DNA of 64,000 nucleotides from Kudoa neothunni (lineage: Eukaryota > Animalia > Cnidaria), in assembly GCA_964304625.1 (NCBI GenBank), contig OZ199838.1, forward strand, positions 10,125,741-10,189,740. Direction: 5' to 3'. Made by a program: the position numbers and the translations under genes. Position 1 is the first letter of the stretch; every line of letters starts with the position of its first letter. Positions 323 through 44,393 of the stretch are shown here, piece after piece. The notes beneath the pieces were generated by a model that worked only from the letters and a program-made list of their open reading frames with translations, was not told the DNA's origin and did not search any database.

Positions 323-1303
323 ATGACCAGCCTTGAGTTGATTTTACCATCTCGGGTTTGTGTTTATGGCAATATCGATTCAGTTTTAAAAAAGGAGCAA
401 TTTGAAGAAAACATCTCTCAACTTAATCTTAACGTGAATTATCACGAAGAAGATGAATTTAACAAAATTGAAGCATTTTGGTGTTACATCACCTACGTAT
501 ACGACAGTTCAACGTTGAACTTGGATGCGAATAATGCTAAAAACAAGCCAAGCGCTAAGATATGCGCTGTAATAGTGAGAAACAAACAAGTTGAAAGTTT
601 TATTCTTGAAAAAAGTTGCTTAGATCATTTGAGATGGTTGTGTAATCAGGATAAATGTGGCTCCAATTGGGATACCATTCAATTGATTGTTGTTGGGCCA
701 AAAGCTAAGAAACAGGTGCAAAATGAACAGCAAGAAAAATTTATGCAAATTATGAACCCTAGATCTTCAAGCACCTCAAAAAAATCCCAACAGCTCCCAT
801 CAACATCCACTTTGGGTGAAGAACAACTTGAACAGAAACTAATTGGATTACAATTGGAATTAGGTATCAATTTAACATTCTGTACCGATACATTAGCCTA
901 CAACAAATGGATTAATTGTGCGATGAAATCAGCTATCCGACTTGATTCATTGACCGCCAACGAAAAACAAATACAAAATAATATTTTCACTTTGGATAAA
1001 ATGCTCTCCAATAAAATACAACCAAACACATCTAATTGGAAATCCAAATGTTGGATTCAACAATTGACACAATTTAGATCGATTGACGTTGATACCGCCA
1101 GATCAATCTCGCGGCATTATCCTTCATTGTTTGAGTTGAGACGAACTATTATGGAAAGTGCGCCGGATTTGTCATTTTTAGAAACTTTGATAGTTGAAAA
1201 AGGATATGGAGTTCTTGCTACAAAATCTACTGTTGGTAATACTGTTGCTAAACAACTAGCTCAAGTATTAACTTCAATAAACCCAAATGAATATGTGCTC
1301 TAA
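323..1303 (+). CDS. EME1: Crossover junction endonuclease subunit EME1/Mms4-like (MUS81 partner), intronless
   Basis: 326-aa ORF. The C-terminal WIQQLTQFRSIDVDTARSISRHYPS...VGNTVAKQLAQVLTSINP matches the EME1 HhH2 region ([25 protein letters not shown]...IGPELSRRIY..MT), and LIGLQL matches the inactive ERCC4 domain. Confidence 0.75.
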   Translation: MTSLELILPSRVCVYGNIDSVLKKEQFEENISQLNLNVNYHEEDEFNKIEAFWCYITYVYDSSTLNLDANNAKNKPSAKICAVIVRNKQVESFILEKSCLDHLRWLCNQDKCGSNWDTIQLIVVGPKAKKQVQNEQQEKFMQIMNPRSSSTSKKSQQLPSTSTLGEEQLEQKLIGLQLELGINLTFCTDTLAYNKWINCAMKSAIRLDSLTANEKQIQNNIFTLDKMLSNKIQPNTSNWKSKCWIQQLTQFRSIDVDTARSISRHYPSLFELRRTIMESAPDLSFLETLIVEKGYGVLATKSTVGNTVAKQLAQVLTSINPNEYVL

Positions 1304-9221: not shown

Positions 9222-12200
9222 TCATTGTCTGAGCTGGTGGGAATCGTCAAATCGTGGTGCAGCTCGTATTTTTGTATTTTTTGTAACTTTATTAGTTTTA
9301 TTACTTTTCATCCTAAATATTGTCAATAAAAATACCTCAACTAAATAGAAATCAATACTTATTATCAGGTTTGGATTTCAGTGGTTTTTCATTATCGTTC
9401 AAATTTCCATTGAAATCTTCAACGTCTGATGAGACAACATGGAAAATCTTATCTTCATCATCATCATCATCGGATATTTTTTCAAAATCAATACTTATAT
9501 CATCTGATTCACCATCAGAGATTATGGTAATATCATCGTCAGATTCGTGTTTTCTTTTGCGTTTTTTGGTTGTAGCAGTTGTTGATTTTTTCGGTTTACT
9601 TTCGGTCTTTTTCATTTTACTAGCGGTTGATTTAGGTTTCTTTTCCTTTGTAGTTGGGTTTTTAGCAACAAAATCTTTCATAGAAGGCATATCCTCAGAC
9701 TCAACTACTTCAGTGGATGTAACAGTGTTGGAGTTTTCAGTTTTGACGGGGTTGTCTTTATTATACTTTACAATCTTATTTTTATTTCCATCCATTGAAG
9801 GTAGATAGACAAACCGATCCAATCGATTAGGAGTAATATTGGACTTGACTGAAACAGTTTTGCTATTGGTTTTTTTTGTTTTAGAAGATCCAATTTTGAA
9901 ATCAGTAAGTTTGGGACCAGGAAGATCTTGTTTTGCCGCTAATTGTTCCTGTTTGTCGAGTTCTTGAAGGAGGTTATCCAAATCGGCCAACCAACTTTCT
10001 TCGACGCTTCTATTTTTGATCAACTCTAGCTGAGTCAACATTTCATCTCGTTCTTTCAATAATGCATCTTTTTTTTCATTGGTCAAATGCAAAAGTGACA
10101 TGCCATAAAGGTATTCATAGTCGTTATCGTCACCAGTGTCGTCAGGGGAACGCGAATCCAGTTGATCGTTTTCAGCTTCCAACAAACTTGCAGAAAGTAT
10201 ATTGTTGTCAGAAGATGTAGCTACTTTATTCTGCCAACGCTTCACCGGATCACTATCAAAACCTTTTCTGCGTAAAATATCAATCATTTCTTTCTTCTTT
10301 TTATGCCTAAGTACAATTTCATCGCTGATAATTCCTAAGATGAATCGAGCTTGGTTTTGAAGTTTTTTTGCATGAGCATTACATTTATCGATCAAATATT
10401 TTTTCCTTTCCTCATATTTTTTGTATCTGACTTGATAGAAAAGTTTCATAATTTCTTCCACACTCTCAAACTTTCTCAAAACTCCCTCATTATCATACAG
10501 CACCAGCGAAGTCGTAGACATTAACGATTCCAATTTGAGCTGTTTGAAAATGTAATCGTTGGTGTAGCTGGCGAGTGCATTTTTCTCCAAGGTAACTAAA
10601 AATCTGACTTTTGTGTCACTATGATACTCCTCAAATGATGCTATTCTTAGTTCGGAAACTTTTTTGGTTTTATCATCGGAAGTGTTGGATTCGAGCATAG
10701 GTTGCAATACTTCTTCTTTATATGGTTGAGTCCAGGTACGAATAGGTAGTTCTGATATTTCGACTTTGTTCTCCTTCAACGAATAGAGAGTGCCCAAAAT
10801 TGAGAACTTATTTGGGCCTATTTGAACGATTTCACCAGAAAAACCCTTATACCAAGGTTTCATCGGTTTTGGTTGGGCGTTATTTTTGATCATATCCTTC
10901 AAATTTTCAATAATTTCTCGAGGGTTATAGTTGGGAATCTTGGTAGCGTACGCCGTACCGATTCCTTCAGCACCATTCACCAAAACCATAGGTATAGTGG
11001 GACAATACCAATCAGGTTCAACCAATTGATTGTCCTCCATTTGGTAGGTTAGAATAGAGTCATCATCCACAGGAAAGATCGACCGTGTAAGCGGATTCAG
11101 AGTGGTGAAAATGTAACGAGCGCTAGCTGCATCTTTTCCACCGTTCAACCTACTACCAAACTGACCCAACGGCATCAGCAGATTGATGTTGTTGGAACCA
11201 ACGAAATCTTGAGCCAATCCCACAATGGTTGAAGCCATACTCGCTTCACCATGGTGATAGGCTGTTAGTTCAGATACAGCACCAGCCAATTGAGCAACCT
11301 TGATTTCTTTCTTCTCGTAGCGTTTCATCATGGTGTACAGAACTTTGCGTTGTGAAGGTTTTAGACCGTCCATGATATTAGGAATGGCACGTTGATTGTC
11401 GGCGTTAGAAAACTGCACAAGTTCCATGTTGATGAAATCATGATAGCTGACTCTTCGAGTTGATTTCTGATAAAGGTACACATCAGGAAGGTTGAGTTGT
11501 CTACGTCTTTTGGACTCCAACAACGCGGCATCCAACCAGAGCTTACGAGCGTCAACACTATCCTTGGAGAATGCCATTTTGATGGCTTGATCACAAACAT
11601 CACCTTCATAATGGAAATCAATGCAATGACGCTCCATAGCAGAAAAATATTTCTTAGCTTCAACACTTGTTGATGTACCCAAACCTTTGTAGTATTTGAC
11701 CCGCCATTTGTGCGAATTTGGTGTGGTATCTTTCCATTCTTGATACTCTGGAAAACTGAAAAACTCATGCGACTCATTCTTATAGAAAACTTTGATCAAC
11801 GGTGTGATAAAGGATTGGATAAATCCGCATTGAACTAATTTTGGCCAATACGAATGTATAAAGTTTATAATAAGACCTTTGATATGGGAACCATCCTCAT
11901 CCTGATCAGTCATAATCATAATTTTTCCATAGCGCAAATTCTTAAATTCGTTAGGATTTTCATATTTACACTTAAAATTGAGGCCAAGGATTTTAATTAG
12001 GTTTGATATCTCGGAATTTTTTATGATAGTGGAGTAGGTGGCATTTCTCACATTGAGCAGTTTACCTCTCAATGGAAACACACCATATAAATCTCTGCCA
12101 ATCACACTGAGACCTGCCACAGCTAACGACTTGGCAGAATCTCCTTCGGTGAGAATCAAAACACACTTGGATGACATTGATGAACCGGCTTTGTTGGCAT

Positions 12201-13583
12201 CGTCTAATTTTGGAATGCCTGCCAAAATGGCCTTTTTAGGATTACTGGCGATTTTCATTAGAGCGGTTTTCGACTTCAAATTAACAAATTCTACAATCGA
12301 ATCGGCACACACTTTGGCTACTTGCTTCAGAAACTTTTCACTTGGAACACATTGAGAACCAAACTTTTTCGCTGTTAGCACCAAATTTTCCTTAGTTTGA
12401 GAGTCGAAACATGGATTCTCAATCTTAGAATTCACAAACAAAAATATGCTGCTCTTGATAAAAATTGGCTTGATCAACTTTTTGTCATTCACTCTCTTCG
12501 AAATAATAGGCATAAGATAATTGACTAATTGATCATATATATAGTTGACATGTGTTCCACCTTTTGTGGTAGCTATACTGTTGACAAAACTCATCTGTTG
12601 TGGACCACTATCGATTGGAGCTACACACAACTCCCATCTGTCATTGACCTTCTCGTAAAGAATGCCGTTCTTATCGGTTCCATTTTTGGGTTGATTTTCA
12701 TCGGTTGCAACCACAGCATCTTCAACTCCATTGATTCCTCTCAGGTATAGTTGAGCGTAGGTTTTGAAGTCCTTGATCTTCAATTGTTCGTTGTTGAAGA
12801 AAACCTTGATTCCATGAGTCACGCCTGCTATATCATAAGCTCTACGTTTGAGTAGTGCGAGGAAATCGTCGTTAATCGATGTTAAACCAAATCTCTTGAG
12901 ATCAGGCCAAAATTTAACACAAGTGTAATCTTTGCCATCAAATTCTTTGATAATAGGATCCTTTGCAGAGTTCATATTATTGGACCATTCTTGTAGGAAA
13001 CGTTTGCCATATTTACCGGAAGCTGTTTCAACAATGAACTTATTACTGAAGATATTACAGAGTTTGGCACCGAACCCATTTCTGCCGCCAGTGATCTTTT
13101 TTTGATTATCGTTATAGTTGCTCGATGTTAGCAAATGCCCAAAAATCATCGTAGGCACATACATATTCTCGCCTTTATGAATCGTCACAGGAATACCAAG
13201 ACCATCATTCCACACACTGATTTCATTTTTCGCTCTATCAAAATTAAAAGAGTTAATGAACTAAGAGAACAACTTTAAATGTGATACATGTCTACGTTAA
13301 TTTTTATTTTTGACATATTCTTGTCGCGCTCTTTATTGTCAGATGCATTCACAAGTATCTCATCAAATATCTTATATAGACCGGGTGAGAATGTGATATT
13401 TTTTTTGATTATAGTGTTAGTAGTATCGTCATAGATCCACATTTCTTGTGAATCTAACGTTGTTGATCCTATGTAGGTATCAGGACGAAGTAATATATGC
13501 TCCAGCTGTGTTTTTTTCTGGTAGATATCCTCTACTGTCCGACTACTGTCCAAATCATTGTTTTCTGTGGCTCTAAAATCCAT
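9222..13583 (-). CDS. TOP2: DNA topoisomerase II
   Basis: ORFs 13275-13583 and 9352-13215 are joined by a 53-nt intron at 13235-13287 (NVDI|AKNEISVWNDG). Motifs: GGRNGFGAK, LILTEGDSA, PLRGK, MTDQDEDGSHIKGL, YYKGLGT and catalytic ASARY. A probable 46-nt last intron lies at 9313-9358, so the 3' end is uncertain. Confidence 0.97.
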
Positions 13584-21194: not shown

Positions 21195-22468
21195 TAGGGT
21201 TTTCCGAGCTTTAGTGACACGTTAGTTTAATATTTATGAACTTTAAAAACAGATAATAGCGACGATTCTCAAATGAAAACTCGAACCAAATTTAAGAGAC
21301 AAACAATAAGTGACCGAGATAGGAAAATGATTGCTAATCAGTGCGAATTGGGTTACAGCAATGCCGTCATCGCTGAAAATGTTGGAATTAAGCGACAAAC
21401 TGTTGCTTCAATTGTAAAATTGTATCTTCTTGATGGGAAAGAAAAGTCATTAAAAAGGGGTGGTGACTTTTCTTCAAAACTCAATGAAGATCAAAAGTTG
21501 CGTATTAGAAGTTGGGTGGATGAGGACGCCACAATTACCCTCAAGACTCTTCGTCAAACATTATTAGACGAATGTGGCGTGAGTGTTAGCGTTAGCACAA
21601 TAAATAGGTGCCTTAAAGAATTCCACTATTCTTTAAAAATGCTCACCATTGTTTTTGAACGAAGAAACTCTGAAGATACAGTGGAAAAACGTTTTGTGTA
21701 CGCCCAAGAGTTCAATTCAAAATTGTTTGAGGCAGAAGGCAACAACTTTGTTTTTATTGTCGAAGTTGGTTTTATTGTATCGTCACGTACAAGACGGAGT
21801 CGTTCGCTTGCTGGTACATCAGCATATGTAAACGTGAAAGCCGTCAAGTCAAGGAACATATCCGTCATCGCAGCGATGAATAAGTATGGCATGGTGCTAT
21901 ATAAAATAAATCGAAGACCAGTAAATGGCGAAGATTTTAAAGAGTTCCTCATTGAGTTGGCAGATTTGTGCCGTTCTTTGGAAATTGAAGATCCATGCTT
22001 CATACTCGATAATGCAAGGATACATCATTATCGGGGACTTAGCGGAATTTTAGCAACGTTACAACTAACGTTGATGTATCTACCTCCGTATTCACCCTTC
22101 ATGAATCCAATTGAAAATGTTCTCAGCAAATGGAAAAACCATGCTGTGAGAGGACATGCGAGAAATGAAAGCGACCTTTTAAATTTAATAGATGATGGTT
22201 TCAAAGTTATTACCACCAACGACTGCTCAAGTTATTATCGAAAAATGCTTCGATATATCAGCAGATGTTTGAACCGAGAAATTATTTTAGAATAAGTATA
22301 AATTATACGATAGTGTTTGGATATCTTTTTCAAATTCCCAAAATTATTATTTTTTGTTCATTCGAAATTTAAAGTAATATTTTCGTATTTTTTACCTAAT
22401 TATATAGCTATCTTAAATACCTTGTCACTAAAGCTTGACATGATGTCATTAAAGCTCGGAAAACCCTA
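21195..22468 (+). mobile_element. Tc1/IS630-like transposon, full length
   Basis: TIRs TAGGGTTTTCCGAGCTTTA(G/A)TGACA at both ends, flanked by TA. Confidence 0.9.
21273..22295 (+). CDS. Tc1/IS630 DD34E transposase (first catalytic Asp replaced by Val)
   Basis: 340-aa open ORF with an N-terminal HTH, FVFIVEVGF (normally FIDExGF), ILDNARIH, then 34 residues to YSPFMNPIE. Confidence 0.9.
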   Translation: MKTRTKFKRQTISDRDRKMIANQCELGYSNAVIAENVGIKRQTVASIVKLYLLDGKEKSLKRGGDFSSKLNEDQKLRIRSWVDEDATITLKTLRQTLLDECGVSVSVSTINRCLKEFHYSLKMLTIVFERRNSEDTVEKRFVYAQEFNSKLFEAEGNNFVFIVEVGFIVSSRTRRSRSLAGTSAYVNVKAVKSRNISVIAAMNKYGMVLYKINRRPVNGEDFKEFLIELADLCRSLEIEDPCFILDNARIHHYRGLSGILATLQLTLMYLPPYSPFMNPIENVLSKWKNHAVRGHARNESDLLNLIDDGFKVITTNDCSSYYRKMLRYISRCLNREIILE

Positions 22469-38591: not shown

Positions 38592-40910
38592 CCCTTTCGT
38601 GCCCAAATTTTTATTTGATAAGACTTTCTTTTTTATCTTACCTGTAAAAATTTAAAGTTAAAATAAAGTGTTCAAATGCAACTTTTTTACTTTCTTCATC
38701 ATGTGCACTAGGGTACTCTTAGGGCACTTACGCAAAAAAAATTCAACGATAATCGTTACTCAAAATAGATTTTTACGCAGTTATATATTTTTATTTATTG
38801 TGATATGAATAGAAACAATTCTTTTTTTTACTACGCAACATAAGATATTGCATTTTAAACAAACGAAATATGTCTTACTTTTACATAATCGGCATTTGCT
38901 TTTTTGTCTACCGTATCGGGGTGATGACCGACATTGTCAGATATGATCGATTCAGTTAAGTTGTTAATTCTATTCTGAGTAGAATAAAAAACAGTATCTG
39001 TAATTGTCGATGTATCATGAGAGGGGAGTCCACGCTTTGTTATTACAGTTGATTTTGTATGGTGCATTAAATGTTCACTGATTGACTGCATAAAGACAAC
39101 AGATCCATTAATTCATTATTGGGAATTCTCCTAATTTTAGAATTGTGGCGATATAACAATCAAGCATTAGTTATGGCTTTATTCAATCCCCGAAAGAATA
39201 TCTTCATATAAAATTTACGGCATTTGTGGTTTCGATTATATAACGCCATCAATATATCCGATAAATCTACTCCAACCATATTTGTGCTGTACTCCGACAT
39301 AACATTAGGGCGATCAATGGTGATCATTCTTTTTGTACGCCTATCAAATCTCTTTATTGCCCCAACCCGATCTGAAGACGAATGCGTGGAAGATAATGTA
39401 TCTACAGAACCATCACACCATTGGGTTATCACTATTCCGTTTGTTTTATCCTGAAAACTTTCGTGTGACCCACGCCCTTTTTGCCAAATTTATTTGGAGG
39501 TGTTAATGGACAATTTTTGATTCGATTTCTTCTTATGGTCCCGACAGAGAAGATATTGCGTTCTTTTAAAATTTTCTGCAAGGGATTAAAGGTGAAAAAA
39601 TTGTCGAAGTACACGAAGAAACTTTTATGACTTGGAAGACTCTCGCACGATTTGAACACAAAATCACCAGAAACTTGACTACATGTATTATCAACTTCTG
39701 GGACTTTTACATCATACAAGAGGAAATCATATACGAGACCACTAGTTCCGCATCTTGTAAATATTTAAACTTCCATTTGGTTGGTTTCTTAGGAAGGTAT
39801 TGTTTGGCTTCACACTTCCCTTGAAGGTATCATATGCTCATCAACTGAATGATCAATTTCGGGTTTACTTTTTAAAAACGTAGGCAGTAGATATTTCAAG
39901 AAGGGTCGGATTTTGACGAATCGATCATATTTGGGTTATGCTTGATCATTTATTACTATCTTATTATTGTTAAATGAATTAATCTTGAGATTTTATCAAA
40001 ACTATTTCTTGAAGAGACTTTCGACACGTGTTGGTGATCAAATGATCTGCTCCAATATTAGCGGTAATGCGGCATTATTAAAATTCCTATCAAGATAATT
40101 ACACCAATGAACTTTTGAATCTCATCAATATCTGTTCACAAATTTATACTGCATCGGACTGCATAAACATTTGTTTCGTTTATAATCATTTCGATCAATG
40201 TTTCGCTAAACAAGAATTTGAAATAATCGATTGGATAGAACAACTCCTCCACGTCTTCAAATGCATCTACCGTAACGACATCATATGGGGCAGAGGGCAA
40301 GGGTCTTTCACGTGTCCTTTTAATGTTGTCATTATCACCATCACAATCATCTGATGATGAAACGCAAAAATCAACATCGTTCTAATTTGTTGAGCACCTA
40401 ACCTAATCATCAGAAACCGTGCCAGGATCTGATAAATCAGCATCTTGAAGAACGATCACTTCGGTTAGAGTGTGGGCATCATTCAGCCCGGGAACGTTGA
40501 GGTTGTGATTTATTTTCGTTAAAAAAATCAGCACACGTGCCCATAGGTCATCTTGGGGAACACGTATGTTTTTTTATATATTTATTCGATACGTTTTTAA
40601 ATTTTAGCTCAAGGGTTGGAAAATAAGTATTTACGCTGTTATATAAATTTAATTTTTTTTTGTTTCGATATCTTTGATAATGATAATTCAACGGGTCAAC
40701 AAATAATGTGACTTTGCCAATCAATAATTTAGAAAAGTAAGCTGTAATATAAAAATACTTTTTCAATAAATTATGTTTTATCTTATTTTAAGGTATAAGA
40801 TATCCCAAAAATCTAGAAAACATAATAAAACGTTGTAAACTCGCTATAATTAAGATGCCATGAACATAATAATTAATTGTACCCTTGGATGACTCTTGGG
40901 CACGAAGGGG
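38592..40910 (-). mobile_element. piggyBac transposon, full length with a decayed transposase
   Basis: TTAA TSDs at 38588-38591 and 40911-40914, TIRs CCCTTTCGTGCCCA / CCCCTTCGTGCCCA. Frameshifted transposase motifs VYFDNFFT, VGTIRRNR and YSTNMVGVDLSD. Confidence 0.9.
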
Positions 40911-42212: not shown

Positions 42213-44393
42213 ATGATGTAAATACACTATGTAAAAAAACTGATTGAAATACATCATATAGGTTGAAGTGTTGTTATATTTATTATTTTTGGATTGTTAT
42301 GACAACCAACTTGTTGGGAATATTTAGTGATGACAGCAACGTTCAAGTAATTTTTTAAAATGACATTATTTTTTTTATAAATCATAATAATATAGTATGG
42401 AATAATTTTAATGAAGCATGTCGATAAAATAAATGCGGCAAGTTATAAAATTGAGACGATCAACAACCAACCACAATCAAAATCGACCAAACTAATAGTC
42501 ACTGAACTCGAATGCCTTCGTAAATACAAATACTTTGGAACTTGAAATAATTTTTAATGATATAATTTAAATATTTTATTCTGAAAACATATTTCATATC
42601 TGCGTGATAACTTTGCTTGAGTTATCGGTTGTTTTAAATATGAATGAATGTTGTTTAAATTTTAAAAACTTAAATCATTACCTGAAAAAGTAACTTTATA
42701 AACTTAGATATCGACAGTAACAAGTGTGCACAAGATATAAAGAAATCAACAAAAATTACTCAAATCCCCGACGATAAAATACTTCTAAAAGTTTTTTACG
42801 CCAAAGATCTACAAAAAGTGTAAACAAAAAATTTGTTCTTACTTTAGAAATTAAATGAAAATCTCTTTTATCAGGTCGGACGAAGCGAAAATTGATCAGA
42901 TGATCAAGCAAGACAATGAAGCACTCCAAAAATATTTTACTGTTAAAGGAATGATACCGGTCGAACTGTACAATGCAAGAACAGACGACATCCTAACCTT
43001 TGGTTCCTCTAATATTGATTTCGAAAATAAAGTATAATTTGTAGTTTACTAGTATAATTGCCTTTAGAAAATAAAACCAGAACTAACTTTAATATTCAGA
43101 GAAGATGCCTTGTTTTTAGGATTCATGACTATGAACCCTCAAAACTTTGCAGAATCACTTAAATACAATGTGAAATATGACGAACAGGGATATTCTATCG
43201 TTGCCAACGATTTTATGTGTTCATCTCCTGTGGAAATCAATTATCTTACCTTCAAGCAACTTATTCAAGTATCTAATTATGCCAAAAATGTTTATAAATA
43301 TTTTTTGTTTTCACCAATCAATTAAACAGGATTCCGCTACGAAGGAAGATATTCTTCATCCTTGTATATCAACAAACCAATTTATTTTGCTTGATACAGC
43401 GAATATCAACAGCAAATGCGTAACAGACTTTACTGTTAGAAATAAGGTGAAATTTGTGGGGGCATTTGATGAAGCAAAGTGCAAAGTGTTAATCGAAAAA
43501 GCAATAGCTCAAAAAGATCTTGATTTGAATCCAATAAAGAAAGGAAATTTCGCAGGATTAAATATTCCATTGCCGATAGATTCAAATATAAAGTTAAAGG
43601 TGAGCTTGTAATATTAATTTTTGTCTAATATAATTTGTTACCGTTAAAGTTATACATCTCATGGATCAAACAAAGTGATATTAAGGGTGATATCAAGACG
43701 GCGTTACAAAATATCCAGGACACTATGTGTGCTGCAGTCGGAACATCAACCGAGGTACGTTTACTGATTTTACTTAATATTTGTCAGTTGAATATTTTAT
43801 AGGTGCCGTCATCCAATATTAAATGCCTCCAAACTGTTTACTTGAGATACGTGATGGAAAATATTTTGGGTTACAATGAAAATACTTTGATCATAGATAA
43901 CCAGTAAATTTATTTCAAATATATCGTAATAATAAGCATATTTTAAGGGTTCGCCCCGACAAATCTGATAAGAAATTGGTGTTTAATGACCCAAGAATTG
44001 GCTTTTATTTCGAAGACGATCCGATTCCCCCACCATCGACGTATATTTATCTAGCTTAATAACTCCAATTAAACTAATTAATCGATCTCTAGTAGTACCA
44101 CATCAACCGAGGGTTCAACCACTCATGAAACATCAACCGAGGGATCAACTACTCATGAAACATCAACTGATGAATCCGCATCCACCACTAGTTCCGACAT
44201 TCCGTCTACTACTCCTGCAACAGAGGGAATGTCCAGTGGTAAAAAAGCTGGAATTGCATTAGCAATAGGAATCAGTGTTATTTTTGTCGCCGGTATTGGA
44301 ATCTTCGTCTACTTAAAGACAAAAAAAATTTCAAGAACAAATAACATTTCCAAAAAGCATCAAACCCAAGAAAAAATTAAAAGGTCTTGCTAA
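42213..44393 (+). CDS. CD39/GDA1-fold (NTPDase-like) membrane protein lacking all catalytic motifs, with mucin-like stalk; 11 exons
   Basis: Open spliced frame. Exons start at 42213, 42262, 42396, 42708, 42875, 43068, 43330, 43650, 43803, about 43948 and 44093. Product: hydrophobic N-terminus, NVQYGIIL, YSIVANDFMC, KQLIQ, ILHPC, SKCV, VGAFDEAKC, NFAGLNIPLP, KCLQTVYLRYVMENILGY, S/T repeats, TM GIALAIGISVIFVAGIGIFVYL and a basic tail. Confidence 0.75.
44100..44171 (+). repeat. Coding 30-nt tandem repeat (TSTEGSTTHE x2.3)
   Basis: ACATCAACCGAGGG(T/A)TCAAC(C/T)ACTCATGAA occurs twice, plus a partial third unit. Confidence 0.9.

What the first reader, a model, noticed from the sequence alone, without database searches (positions are those of the whole stretch)
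42213..44393. Catalytically dead CD39/NTPDase-fold surface protein (candidate pseudo-apyrase)
Seen: an intact 11-exon reading frame that the ORF track shows only as unrecognisable fragments. Against recalled human CD39/ENTPD1 it aligns collinearly: NVQYGIIL vs NVKYGIVL, YSIVANDFMC vs YNVYTHSFLC, KQLIQ vs AKDIQ, ILHPC vs LRDPC, SKCV vs TPCT, VGAFDEAKC vs QGIGNYQQC, NFAGLNIPLP vs AFNGIFLPP, and KCLQTVYLRYVMENILGY vs YCFSGTYILSLLLQGY. All five apyrase-conserved regions are replaced: ACR1 DAGSS becomes MKHVD, ACR2 ATAGMR becomes YAKDLQ, the ACR3 EEG motif is absent, ACR4 DLGGAST becomes IFREDAL, and ACR5 GWTLG becomes approximately DPRIG. Inference: the scaffold is maintained while the ASKHA phosphate-binding loops are gone. 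The enzyme fold may therefore have been repurposed as a non-catalytic receptor, adhesin or variable surface antigen, which would be relevant to host interaction if the organism is a parasite. I know of no described family of this kind.
Basis: partly seen in the sequence, partly recalled or inferred. Interest (0 to 1): 0.9.

Follow-up and report, generated by a model that had tools for sequence, protein, structure and literature searches.

The report
Dead CD39-type apyrase surface protein
This intact 11-exon gene of a fish-muscle parasite (almost certainly Kudoa neothunni) encodes a membrane-anchored copy of an ATP/ADP-degrading enzyme of the CD39 type that has lost its nucleotide-handling loops, and it is one of at least 34 such genes in a genome of only about 5,300 predicted genes, so it probably binds something rather than hydrolysing it.

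Summary
Window 42213-44393 (+) gives an intact 517-aa frame over 11 GT-AG exons: an N-terminal hydrophobic helix, a ~385-aa ectodomain, a Ser/Thr stalk, a TM helix and a short tail.

Descent from a CD39-type NTPDase is supported by several lines:
- A profile of 8 paralogues matches a motif-intact CD39-type gene of the same genome (37 bits; best of 1000 shuffles 7.3; hhalign 95%).
- It also matches Pfam-positive myxozoan NTPDase-like proteins (42.6 bits; hhalign 96%).
- Seven of 8 intron positions and phases are shared with the intact gene.
- Eight of its 10 ectodomain cysteines align.

ACR1, ACR2, ACR4 and ACR5 are replaced; ACR3 keeps at most an Asp. No member examined has a DxGG loop at ACR4 (28 loci) or an ACR1 loop (8 loci). 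The family has at least 34 loci.

The genome matches the published Kudoa neothunni assembly (40.26 Mb; mitochondrial contig of exactly 18,219 b).

This scan had already flagged the same family on other DNA of this genome, and two follow-ups reached the same reading. It is a new variant of a known kind, a pseudoenzyme branch of GDA1/CD39.

The parts
42213..42217 (+). Exon 1 (tentative): ATGAT, a start codon plus two bases of a split ATG codon
   Evidence: First in-frame ATG after a TGA, followed by the donor GTAAAT. The surrounding bases are conserved in paralogue L005, but L005 has no ATG at that spot. Unverified.
42262..42346 (+). Exon 2: N-terminal hydrophobic helix (signal anchor or signal peptide), ending ...SDDSNVQ
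   Evidence: Paralogues also carry a hydrophobic segment directly before exon 3.
42396..42519 (+). Exon 3: first beta-strand YGIIL followed by the ACR1-equivalent MKHVDKI (canonical DxGS[ST] lost), plus the first Cys of pair 1
   Evidence: The phase-0 intron directly before [YF]G is shared with the intact NTPDase L003.
42708..42819 (+). Exon 4: ACR2-equivalent KVFYAKDLQK (canonical [AG]T[AG]GxR lost)
   Evidence: Aligned to the IGTGGLR motif of L003 and the YGTELTR motif of P0010.
42875..43031 (+). Exon 5: ACR3-equivalent ...ARTDDILTFGSSNIDF (EEG..YGW..NY lost; a conserved Asp remains)
43068..43268 (+). Exon 6: ACR4-equivalent LTLIFREDALFLGF (DxGG[AS]S lost) and the conserved ...NDFMCSS... Cys
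   Evidence: hhalign places it on the VVDIGGSSLQVGL motif of L003. None of 28 family loci has DxGG here.
43330..43599 (+). Exon 7: Cys-rich part of lobe II (HPC ... C ... KFVGAFDEAKC ... NFAGLNIPLP)
   Evidence: Alignment A1. It hits P0010 residues 263-323 at E 2.1e-4 in 1.84 billion proteins. In the AF2 model the top PDB rows are rat NTPDase1/2 in the matching region.
43650..43754 (+). Exon 8: helix region carrying the Cys in ...DTMC...
43803..43903 (+). Exon 9: ...KCLQTVYLRYVMENILGY..., partner Cys and conserved helix
   Evidence: Aligned to the ERCFSSKYLKF motif of L003 and to P0010.
43948..44040 (+). Exon 10: ACR5-equivalent ...FNDPRIGFYF (xWTLG lost; ADPR[IV]GF conserved within the family)
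   Evidence: The alignment is less certain here.
44093..44393 (+). Exon 11: Ser/Thr-rich stalk (61% S/T), TM helix (residues ~470-492), basic 25-aa tail and TAA stop
   Evidence: Hydropathy and composition. Weak Podoplanin-like compositional hit.
44100..44167 (+). 30-nt tandem repeat (2.3 copies) encoding the repeated TSTEGSTTHE unit of the stalk
   Evidence: Tandem Repeats Finder, 94% matches.

Best explanation
The gene encodes a non-catalytic descendant of a cell-surface (CD39-type) NTPDase, that is, a pseudo-apyrase.

Architecture. A hydrophobic N-terminal helix runs straight into the first strand of a two-lobed ectodomain, as in CD39. Four of the five conserved disulfide pairs are kept. 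A Ser/Thr-rich stalk of about 50 residues, probably O-glycosylated, follows, then a C-terminal TM helix and a short basic tail.

Why it should not hydrolyse. Both phosphate-binding hairpin loops of the actin/hexokinase-like fold (ACR1 and ACR4) are replaced, as are ACR2 and ACR5. It therefore should not be able to hold Mg-nucleotide or activate water. It most likely acts by binding a ligand in or around the remodelled inter-lobe cleft.

Origin. The gene arose by duplication of a CD39-type gene like the intact one at C1:884-887 kb. It belongs to a divergent family of at least 34 loci (30-53% identity among the close members) in Kudoa neothunni. The family is kept under purifying selection.

Shown here: gene structure, homology, motif loss, family size, intactness.
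Inferred: membrane topology, glycosylation, lack of activity, and a role at the host interface (surface coat, adhesin or receptor).
For: Gene model: intact 517-aa frame with 10 canonical introns.

Homology:
- The exon-7 profile finds only myxozoan NTPDase-like P0010 (E 2.1e-4) and a 91-aa fragment among 1.84e9 proteins. P0010 matches PF01150 at 45 bits and rat NTPDase1 at E 1e-8 over the same region.
- Joined product against P0010: 46.6 bits across the exon 6/7 junction.
- HMM of 8 members against P0010: 42.6 bits; against P0018: 35.4 bits; shuffles at most 9.9 bits.
- hhalign against the P0010 clade: 95.9%, E 5e-9, 296 columns.
- Against the motif-intact L003 gene of the same genome: 37.0 bits, with shuffles at most 7.3 bits; hhalign 95.1%, 273 columns. 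ACR2 and ACR4 align to the degenerate segments.
- Seven of 8 intron positions and phases are shared with L003, but not with the GDA1-type gene L001.
- Eight of 10 Cys align. The missing pair is still present in subfamily members L014 and L015.

Motif loss across the family.

Selection: pN 0.26 against pS 0.66 relative to the nearest paralogue.

Family size: at least 34 loci.

TM helix and stalk.
Against: - Pfam GDA1_CD39 recognises neither the single exons nor the locus in a six-frame scan.
- Exon-level profiles find no NTPDase in the PDB by sequence.
- The whole-protein fold was not predicted. The two fragment models are of low confidence (pLDDT 62 and 53), and the second gave only noise.
- There is no transcript or protein evidence.
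- dS is saturated, so omega of about 0.2 is only indicative.
- A conserved Asp at the ACR3 position and the conserved ADPR[IV]GF motif leave room for an unexpected chemistry.
- The function is inferred from architecture and family size only.
Confidence: 0.78

Rival explanations
1. It is a decaying, unexpressed relic (pseudogene) of an NTPDase duplicate, and the open frame is a leftover.
For: - All catalytic motifs are gone.
- No RNA evidence was obtainable.
- One family member (C1:5683077) has a TAG inside exon 7, so some copies do decay.
Against: - Eleven exons are kept in frame with canonical splice sites.
- Seven other paralogues at 30-53% identity are also open over exons 3/4 to 10.
- pN is far below pS.
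- New family-specific motifs are conserved: FLKVFY, ANxFxCASP, HPC, NFAGLNLP, ADPRIGF.
Confidence: 0.06
2. It is still an enzyme, either a nucleotidase using migrated residues or a hydrolase with a new substrate.
For: A family-conserved Asp lies at or next to the position of the ACR3 catalytic Glu, and ADPR[IV]GF is strongly conserved at the ACR5 position. Pseudoenzymes with migrated catalytic residues are known (PMC10211241, abstract seen).
Against: Both glycine-rich phosphate loops (ACR1 DxGS, ACR4 DxGG) are replaced by bulky or charged residues in every member examined. In NTPDases these loops bind the phosphates and the metal (established knowledge of the ASKHA fold).
Confidence: 0.07
3. 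The resemblance to CD39 is convergent or chance, and the family is an unrelated lineage-specific Cys-rich surface protein.
For: - Pfam and PDB sequence searches on the exons are blank.
- Most hits of the exon-7 profile in the big library are spurious leucine-rich-repeat proteins.
- No full-length fold is available.
Against: - Two independent profile links, each spanning about 270-300 columns, score far above shuffles.
- Intron positions are shared with an intact CD39-type gene.
- Cysteines are collinear.
- NTPDases top the structure search for exon 7 in the right register.
Confidence: 0.03

Closest known systems
Vertebrate cell-surface NTPDases (CD39/ENTPD1, NTPDase2; structures 3ZX3, 3CJ1)
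   Same: - N-terminal hydrophobic helix a few residues before the first strand ([YF]G[IV][IV]h).
- Collinear ectodomain.
- Cysteine pattern ...F.C..., .PC, C, G.....C, C, C.
- C-terminal TM helix.
- The exon-7 model superposes on residues ~261-337.
   Different: - ACR1, ACR2, ACR4 and ACR5 are replaced, and ACR3 is reduced to an Asp.
- One disulfide pair (C....C before F.G) is lost.
- A mucin-like Ser/Thr stalk is inserted before the TM helix.
- Pfam does not detect it.
The motif-intact CD39-type gene of the same genome (G000:C1:884130-887228, minus strand; L003)
   Same: Same exon plan, with 7 of 8 intron positions and phases shared. Profile match of 37 bits, hhalign 95%. It also ends in a TM helix.
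   Different: L003 keeps FDAGSTGTR (ACR1), GTGGLR (ACR2), the ACR3 Glu, DIGGSS (ACR4), NWTLG (ACR5) and all ten Cys. Its ACR1 exon scores 20 bits on PF01150. The candidate has none of these motifs.
Myxozoan 'ENTPD8-like' proteins: Thelohanellus kitauei P0010, Henneguya salminicola HZS_3131 (P0018), Myxobolus squamalis MXB_1919 (P0019)
   Same: These are the closest proteins in public databases. P0010's best match in this genome is the candidate's own exon 7. They are themselves partly degenerate (DISSYD, GTELTR, DMKNYS) and have TM helices at both ends.
   Different: They still pass Pfam PF01150 (45 bits) and keep the ACR1 and ACR4 Asp and an ACR3 with ..DEALFGW... They have no Ser/Thr stalk. 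They are found as single proteins in the databases, not as a large family.
Enzymatically inactive members of parasite surface enzyme families, for example the inactive trans-sialidase/gp85 proteins of Trypanosoma cruzi (from general knowledge, not tested here)
   Same: The working analogy: a large, divergent family of membrane-anchored, mucin-associated copies of an ecto-enzyme that have lost catalysis and act by binding.
   Different: Unrelated fold and organism. For the Kudoa family, no binding partner, localisation or expression is known.

Membership tests
GDA1/CD39 nucleoside phosphatase family (Pfam PF01150) | Match to the Pfam profile above the gathering score | tested here: inconclusive
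Single exons give no hit at E<=10. The six-frame scan of the genome hits L001 and L003 but not this locus.
GDA1/CD39 nucleoside phosphatase family (Pfam PF01150) | Demonstrable homology to accepted members (profile or profile-profile) | tested here: met
   Family HMM: 42.6 bits to P0010 (PF01150-positive) and 37.0 bits to L003, against shuffles of at most 9.9 and 7.3 bits. hhalign: 95.9% and 95.1% over 296 and 273 columns.
GDA1/CD39 nucleoside phosphatase family (Pfam PF01150) | ACR1 phosphate-1 loop, DxGS[ST]xx[RH] | tested here: not met
   YGIIL-MKHVDKIN in place of [FY]G.I.-DAGSTGTR. The loop is lost in all 8 members where exon 3 was found.
GDA1/CD39 nucleoside phosphatase family (Pfam PF01150) | ACR2, [AG]T[AG]GxR | tested here: not met
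   FYAKDLQK aligned to IGTGGLRN.
GDA1/CD39 nucleoside phosphatase family (Pfam PF01150) | ACR3 with the catalytic Glu, GxEEGxYxWxxxNY | tested here: not met
   ARTDDILTFGSSNIDF. Only an Asp conserved within the family remains near the Glu position. The alignment is uncertain by 1-2 residues.
GDA1/CD39 nucleoside phosphatase family (Pfam PF01150) | ACR4 phosphate-2 loop, DxGG[AS]S | tested here: not met
   LIFREDAL aligned to VDIGGSSL. No DxGG at this position in any of 28 family loci.
GDA1/CD39 nucleoside phosphatase family (Pfam PF01150) | ACR5, xWxLG | tested here: not met
   NDPRIGF against NWTLGK. The Trp is lost. The alignment is less certain here.
Cell-surface (CD39-type) NTPDase subgroup | Ten conserved ectodomain cysteines (five disulfides) | tested here: inconclusive
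   Eight of 10 are present at aligned positions (residues 70, 78, 212, 240, 258, 279, 345, 361). The C....C pair before F.G is absent here but is kept in L014, L015 and P0003. Disulfide bonding itself was not tested.
Cell-surface (CD39-type) NTPDase subgroup | TM helices at both ends of the ectodomain | tested here: inconclusive
   The C-terminal TM helix is clear (KD19 up to 2.76, residues 470-492). The N-terminal segment is hydrophobic but stays below the 1.6 threshold, and its start codon is unverified.
Cell-surface (CD39-type) NTPDase subgroup | Gene structure shared with a bona fide member in the same genome | tested here: met
   Seven of 8 intron positions and phases coincide with L003: four exactly and three within a few residues in the same phase.
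ASKHA (actin/hexokinase/Hsp70-like) two-lobe fold | Two RNase-H-like lobes seen in a confident 3D model | not tested
Pseudoenzyme | Homologue of an enzyme that lacks the catalytic motifs and is maintained by selection | tested here: met
   Homology and motif loss as above. Frames are intact in 8 diverged paralogues, and pN 0.26 is below pS 0.66.
Pseudoenzyme | Measured absence of the ancestral activity | not testable with these tools
   Needs a recombinant ectodomain and an ATP/ADP hydrolysis assay.

The most novel reading that the evidence does not exclude
Dead ecto-NTPDases on mucin stalks are a principal host-interface family of Kudoa. There are at least 34 loci, roughly 0.6% of about 5,300 predicted genes. 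They may form a variable coat, or a set of receptors whose remodelled cleft binds host molecules in the muscle fibre, for example nucleotides without hydrolysing them, or host proteins. They could contribute to immune silence or to the parasite's handling of host ATP. This would be the first described pseudoenzyme radiation of the GDA1/CD39 family.
Probability: 0.2. Interest if true: 0.75.

Novelty: new variant of a known kind. Interest (0 to 1): 0.6.

Why it matters
Myxozoans have very small gene sets. Their surface biology is almost unknown, and lineage-specific genes like this one are easily missed by homology-guided annotation. The published K. neothunni annotation had almost no RNA support (PMC12239612).

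A large, selectively maintained family of catalytically disabled CD39-type ectodomains would have three consequences:
- It would add GDA1/CD39 to the enzyme families known to spawn pseudoenzymes.
- It would give concrete candidates for surface antigens or adhesins of Kudoa, parasites that spoil tuna and other fish muscle.
- It offers a natural series from intact enzyme (L003), through partly degenerate forms (Thelohanellus and Henneguya proteins), to fully degenerate members. That series can be used to study how an ASKHA nucleotide site is dismantled and reused.

I found no paper describing such a family.

Tried and rejected
Blank or uninformative results:
- Pfam on the nine exon translations: no GDA1_CD39 hit, only compositional noise (Podoplanin, Vir) on the stalk.
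- PF01150 six-frame scan of the genome: hits L001 and L003 only.
- PDB sequence search with the exon-7 profile and with the exon-5/6 profile: no NTPDase.
- Big-library profile search: 15 of 17 hits are multi-repeat leucine-rich proteins matching F.G.F..C..L. I rejected these as spurious.
- The search for homologous proteins with P0010, with alignment A2 and with the L001 exon returned only 2-3 proteins each, so no broad canonical NTPDase alignment could be built.
- hhalign of the family against GDA1-type pieces (L001, P0020, P0021): nothing. The link is to the CD39-type branch only.
- tblastn of the joined product against L001: nothing.
- ESM-Atlas look-alikes for exons 6 and 7: low recognition, OGFOD2-like viral clusters, taken as noise.
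- AF2 of the exon-5/6 read-through piece of paralogue L006: pLDDT 53, Foldseek noise.

Technical failures:
There is therefore no RNA-seq check, and read laying was not used.
- The automatic exon chaining failed on L003 and on four paralogues. The L003 junctions were chosen by hand from the list.

Step left out by rule:
- The joined 517-aa product was not sent to Pfam, PDB, database or structure tools.
Full report
**What is at 42213-44393**

The region is AT-rich (about 29% G+C). A bacterial-style ORF list shows it only as fragments. Joining eleven segments on the + strand gives 1554 nt: 517 codons and a TAA stop. The segments are 42213-17, 42262-346, 42396-519, 42708-819, 42875-43031, 43068-268, 43330-599, 43650-754, 43803-903, 43948-44040 and 44093-44393. 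All ten introns are GT...AG and 36-188 nt long.

The only weak point of the model is the 5-nt first exon (ATGAT). It is the first in-frame ATG after a stop and is followed by GTAAAT. The bases around it are conserved in the nearest paralogue, but that paralogue has ACG where the candidate has its first ATG. The start is therefore unverified.

The product has five parts:
- a hydrophobic N-terminal segment that ends nine residues before the motif YGIIL;
- an ectodomain of about 385 residues with eight cysteines;
- a 51-residue stretch that is 61% Ser/Thr, encoded partly by a 30-nt tandem repeat at 44100-44167;
- a clear TM helix (residues ~470-492, Kyte-Doolittle 19-residue mean up to 2.76);
- a 25-residue basic tail.

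**Which organism**

The window is G000:C1:10125741-10189740 in an assembly of 40,260,978 bases in four contigs. The only database proteins related to the candidate are myxozoan.

A note by an earlier follow-up agent suggested Kudoa neothunni, and I tested that. The paper describing that assembly (PMC12239612) reports 40.2 Mb, three chromosomes, a circular mitochondrial genome, 30.41% G+C, a median intron of 49 bp, and a (TAAACC)n telomere at a single chromosome end. The same paper gives 18,219 bp for the mitochondrial contig.

In G000, contig 4 is exactly 18,219 bases. The (TAAACC)n array occurs only at the end of contig 2, at 12.0395-12.0401 Mb of 12,040,071. I take the genome to be that K. 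neothunni assembly, recovered from yellowfin tuna sequencing data.

The paper also says that almost no RNA reads mapped and that genes were predicted from protein hints. That explains why a fast-evolving family could go unannotated.

**Is it related to CD39/NTPDases?**

Direct tests at exon level are blank:
- Pfam finds nothing in the nine exon translations.
- A six-frame PF01150 scan of the genome finds two other loci but not this one.
- Exon profiles find no NTPDase among PDB sequences.

The link appears only with profiles and intermediates.

1. An alignment of exon 7 from 11 paralogues (A1) was searched against 1.84 billion representative proteins. It found only two credible relatives, a 91-aa metagenomic fragment and P0010 (E 2.1e-4, residues 263-323). 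The other hits are leucine-rich-repeat proteins and I reject them.
2. P0010 is the Thelohanellus kitauei protein annotated 'ENTPD8'. It passes PF01150 at 45 bits against a cut-off of 24.9. It matches rat NTPDase1 (3ZX0) at E 1e-8 over residues 36-314, which covers the stretch hit by A1.
3. The joined product, built in a script, aligns to P0010 with 46.6 bits and 32% identity over 94 residues. The alignment runs across the exon 6/7 junction, which also supports that splice.
4. I modelled exons 3-10 (or 4-10) of seven paralogues, and all are open. A profile of the eight sequences scores 42.6 bits on P0010 and 35.4 bits on the Henneguya protein P0018. The best of about 6,000 shuffled decoys scores 9.9 bits.
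5. hhalign against the three myxozoan proteins gives 95.9% probability, E 5e-9, over 296 columns.

**An intact relative in the same genome**

The weaker PF01150 hit (L003, C1:884130-887228, minus strand) is a CD39-type gene with the hallmark motifs in place:
- ACR1: FDAGSTGTR
- ACR2: GTGGLR
- ACR3: a Glu at the catalytic position
- ACR4: DIGGSS
- ACR5: NWTLG
- ten cysteines and a C-terminal TM helix

Its ACR1 exon scores 20 bits, and its exon-7-like exon 11.3 bits, on PF01150 at the correct profile positions.

The family profile matches the joined L003 model at 37.0 bits (E 1e-10), where the best of 1000 shuffles is 7.3 bits. hhalign gives 95.1% over 273 columns. In that alignment the candidate's KVFYAKDLQ lies on KFIGTGGLR (ACR2). 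Its LTLIFREDALFLGF lies on GVVDIGGSSLQVGL (ACR4).

The two genes also share their exon plan, which is independent of residue similarity. These junctions coincide in position and phase:
- the phase-0 intron directly before [YF]G;
- the junctions after ACR2 (phase 2);
- ...ENK|KIK against ...GTE|TVE;
- ...LIQ|DSA against ...LIM|ETN;
- ...IKLK|LYISW against ...IKLT|LMGSW.

Two further introns are in the same phase within a few residues. Only the last junction differs.

The other NTPDase of the genome (L001, GDA1-like, motifs intact) has a different exon structure and shows no profile similarity to the family. The family therefore descends from the CD39-type branch.

**Cysteines and structure**

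Eight of the ten ectodomain cysteines of L003 and P0010 align with the candidate's Cys 70, 78, 212, 240, 258, 279, 345 and 361. The missing pair, C....C just before the F.G motif, is still present in more distant family members (L014, L015) and in the fragment P0003.

Only exon-sized pieces could be folded by reference.

The exon-5/6 piece (pLDDT 53) gave noise.

**Status of the catalytic motifs**

In the combined alignment, reading L003 | P0010 | candidate:
- ACR1: FDAGSTGTR | VDISSYDIE | LMKHVDKIN
- ACR2: IGTGGLR | YGTELTR | FYAKDLQ
- ACR3: DETEAEYDF | GYDEALFGW | RTDDILTFG
- ACR4: VDIGGSS | LDMKNYS | LIFREDA
- ACR5: NWTLG in L003, against DPRIG in the candidate (less certain)

An Asp conserved across the family sits at or next to the catalytic Glu position of ACR3.

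Across the genome, the exon-7 profile finds at least 34 loci. Twenty-eight of them have an adjacent exon-6-like exon. None of those carries DxGG at the ACR4 position, and none of the eight detected exon-3 equivalents carries DxGS.

**Family and selection**

There are two subfamilies.
- About ten close members carry NFAGLNLP. They are the candidate, a four-gene cluster at C3:10.34-10.37 Mb, and genes at C2:5.884, C2:7.35, C3:2.04, C3:4.10 and C1:5.683 Mb.
- About twenty or more distant members keep the extra Cys pair.

The candidate is a singleton in its window. Its nearest paralogue, L005, is 53% identical. Against L005, pN is 0.26 and pS is 0.66, giving omega of about 0.2. dS is saturated, so this shows only that replacement changes are held well below silent ones. 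New family-specific motifs are conserved (FLKVFY, ANxFxCASP, HPC, KFVGxF.E..C, NFAGLNLP, VYLRYV.E..LG, ADPR[IV]GF). Conserved new motifs argue for a maintained function rather than decay.

**How it most likely works**

In NTPDases the two glycine-rich hairpin loops, ACR1 and ACR4, clamp the phosphates and the metal ion, and the ACR3 Glu activates water. This is established knowledge of the family and of the ASKHA fold. With both loops replaced by bulky and charged residues, hydrolysis is very unlikely.

The protein keeps the disulfide-braced scaffold. It gains a Ser/Thr stalk and keeps membrane anchoring. The most economical reading is a binding protein displayed on the parasite surface, one of a diversified set. 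I put about 0.8 on 'CD39-derived, non-catalytic membrane protein' and about 0.4 on a host-interface coat, adhesin or receptor role specifically. A working analogy, from general knowledge, is the inactive trans-sialidase-like proteins of Trypanosoma cruzi.

**What was not done**

The joined 517-aa product was not submitted to Pfam, PDB, the protein databases or structure prediction. Joined sequences were made only inside scripts from session files, for local BLAST, HMMER and hhalign.

**Relation to earlier notes of this scan**

Seven or more first-stage notes and two follow-ups on other DNA of this genome describe the same family with the same reading.

One of them (s1-701648) calls the gene that contains L003 a pseudo-enzyme. 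My reading of that locus finds ACR1, ACR2, ACR4 and ACR5 intact.

**Novelty**

Literature searches found no description of a pseudo-NTPDase family in Myxozoa or elsewhere. The T. kitauei genome paper lists an NTPDase only as a drug target.

**Verdict**

The gene is real and intact. It is a new, catalytically disabled variant of a known enzyme family and part of a large lineage-specific expansion. Its function is unknown but is probably binding at the parasite surface.

Noticed in passing
G000:C1:884130-887228 (L003, minus strand): CD39-type NTPDase gene with ACR1, ACR2, ACR4, ACR5 and the ACR3 Glu intact, and a C-terminal TM helix. It has the same exon plan as the dead family. An earlier first-stage note (s1-701648) had called the gene at this place a pseudo-enzyme.
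   Followed up: partly
G000:C2:7277245-7281069 (L001): Second genuine NTPDase, GDA1-like. PF01150 scores 119 bits on one exon, and the motifs YGIIDAGSTGSR, ATAGMR and ELGGAS are intact. It has a different exon structure and no profile similarity to the dead family. Part of the locus is masked as N.
   Followed up: partly
window 9352-13215 (-): Single open frame of 1287 aa encoding DNA topoisomerase II (DNA_gyraseB, Toprim, TOPRIM_C and DNA_topoisoIV domains). It is unusually free of introns for this genome.
   Followed up: partly
window 21273-22295 (+): Intact 340-aa Tc1/mariner-type transposase frame (HTH domains plus DDE_3).
   Followed up: no
window 323-1303 (+): 326-aa open frame with an EME1/MUS81 C-terminal domain (30 bits).
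   Followed up: no
window 38855-39719 (-): Three adjacent open fragments. By eye they resemble pieces of a decayed piggyBac-like transposase. Not searched.
   Followed up: no
G000:C1:5683077-5683280 (L010): A family member with a TAG inside its exon-7 equivalent and weak, fragmented matches elsewhere. It is probably a decaying copy.
   Followed up: no
G000:C2:11538816-11539037 and C2:11578201-11578422 (L035, L036): Two family members 39 kb apart with identical exon-6 and exon-7 translations. This looks like a very recent duplication, or possibly a collapsed or expanded repeat in the assembly.
   Followed up: no
L032 (ENA ERZ28624939, 901-nt scaffold; protein P0003): A metagenomic fragment encodes an exon-7 equivalent that is 33-45% identical to about 20 loci of the distant subfamily. 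The family therefore exists in at least one other, unidentified organism.
   Followed up: partly
G000:C2:12039536-12040069: (TAAACC)n telomere array at the very end of contig 2, and nowhere else in the assembly, as reported for K. neothunni.
   Followed up: yes
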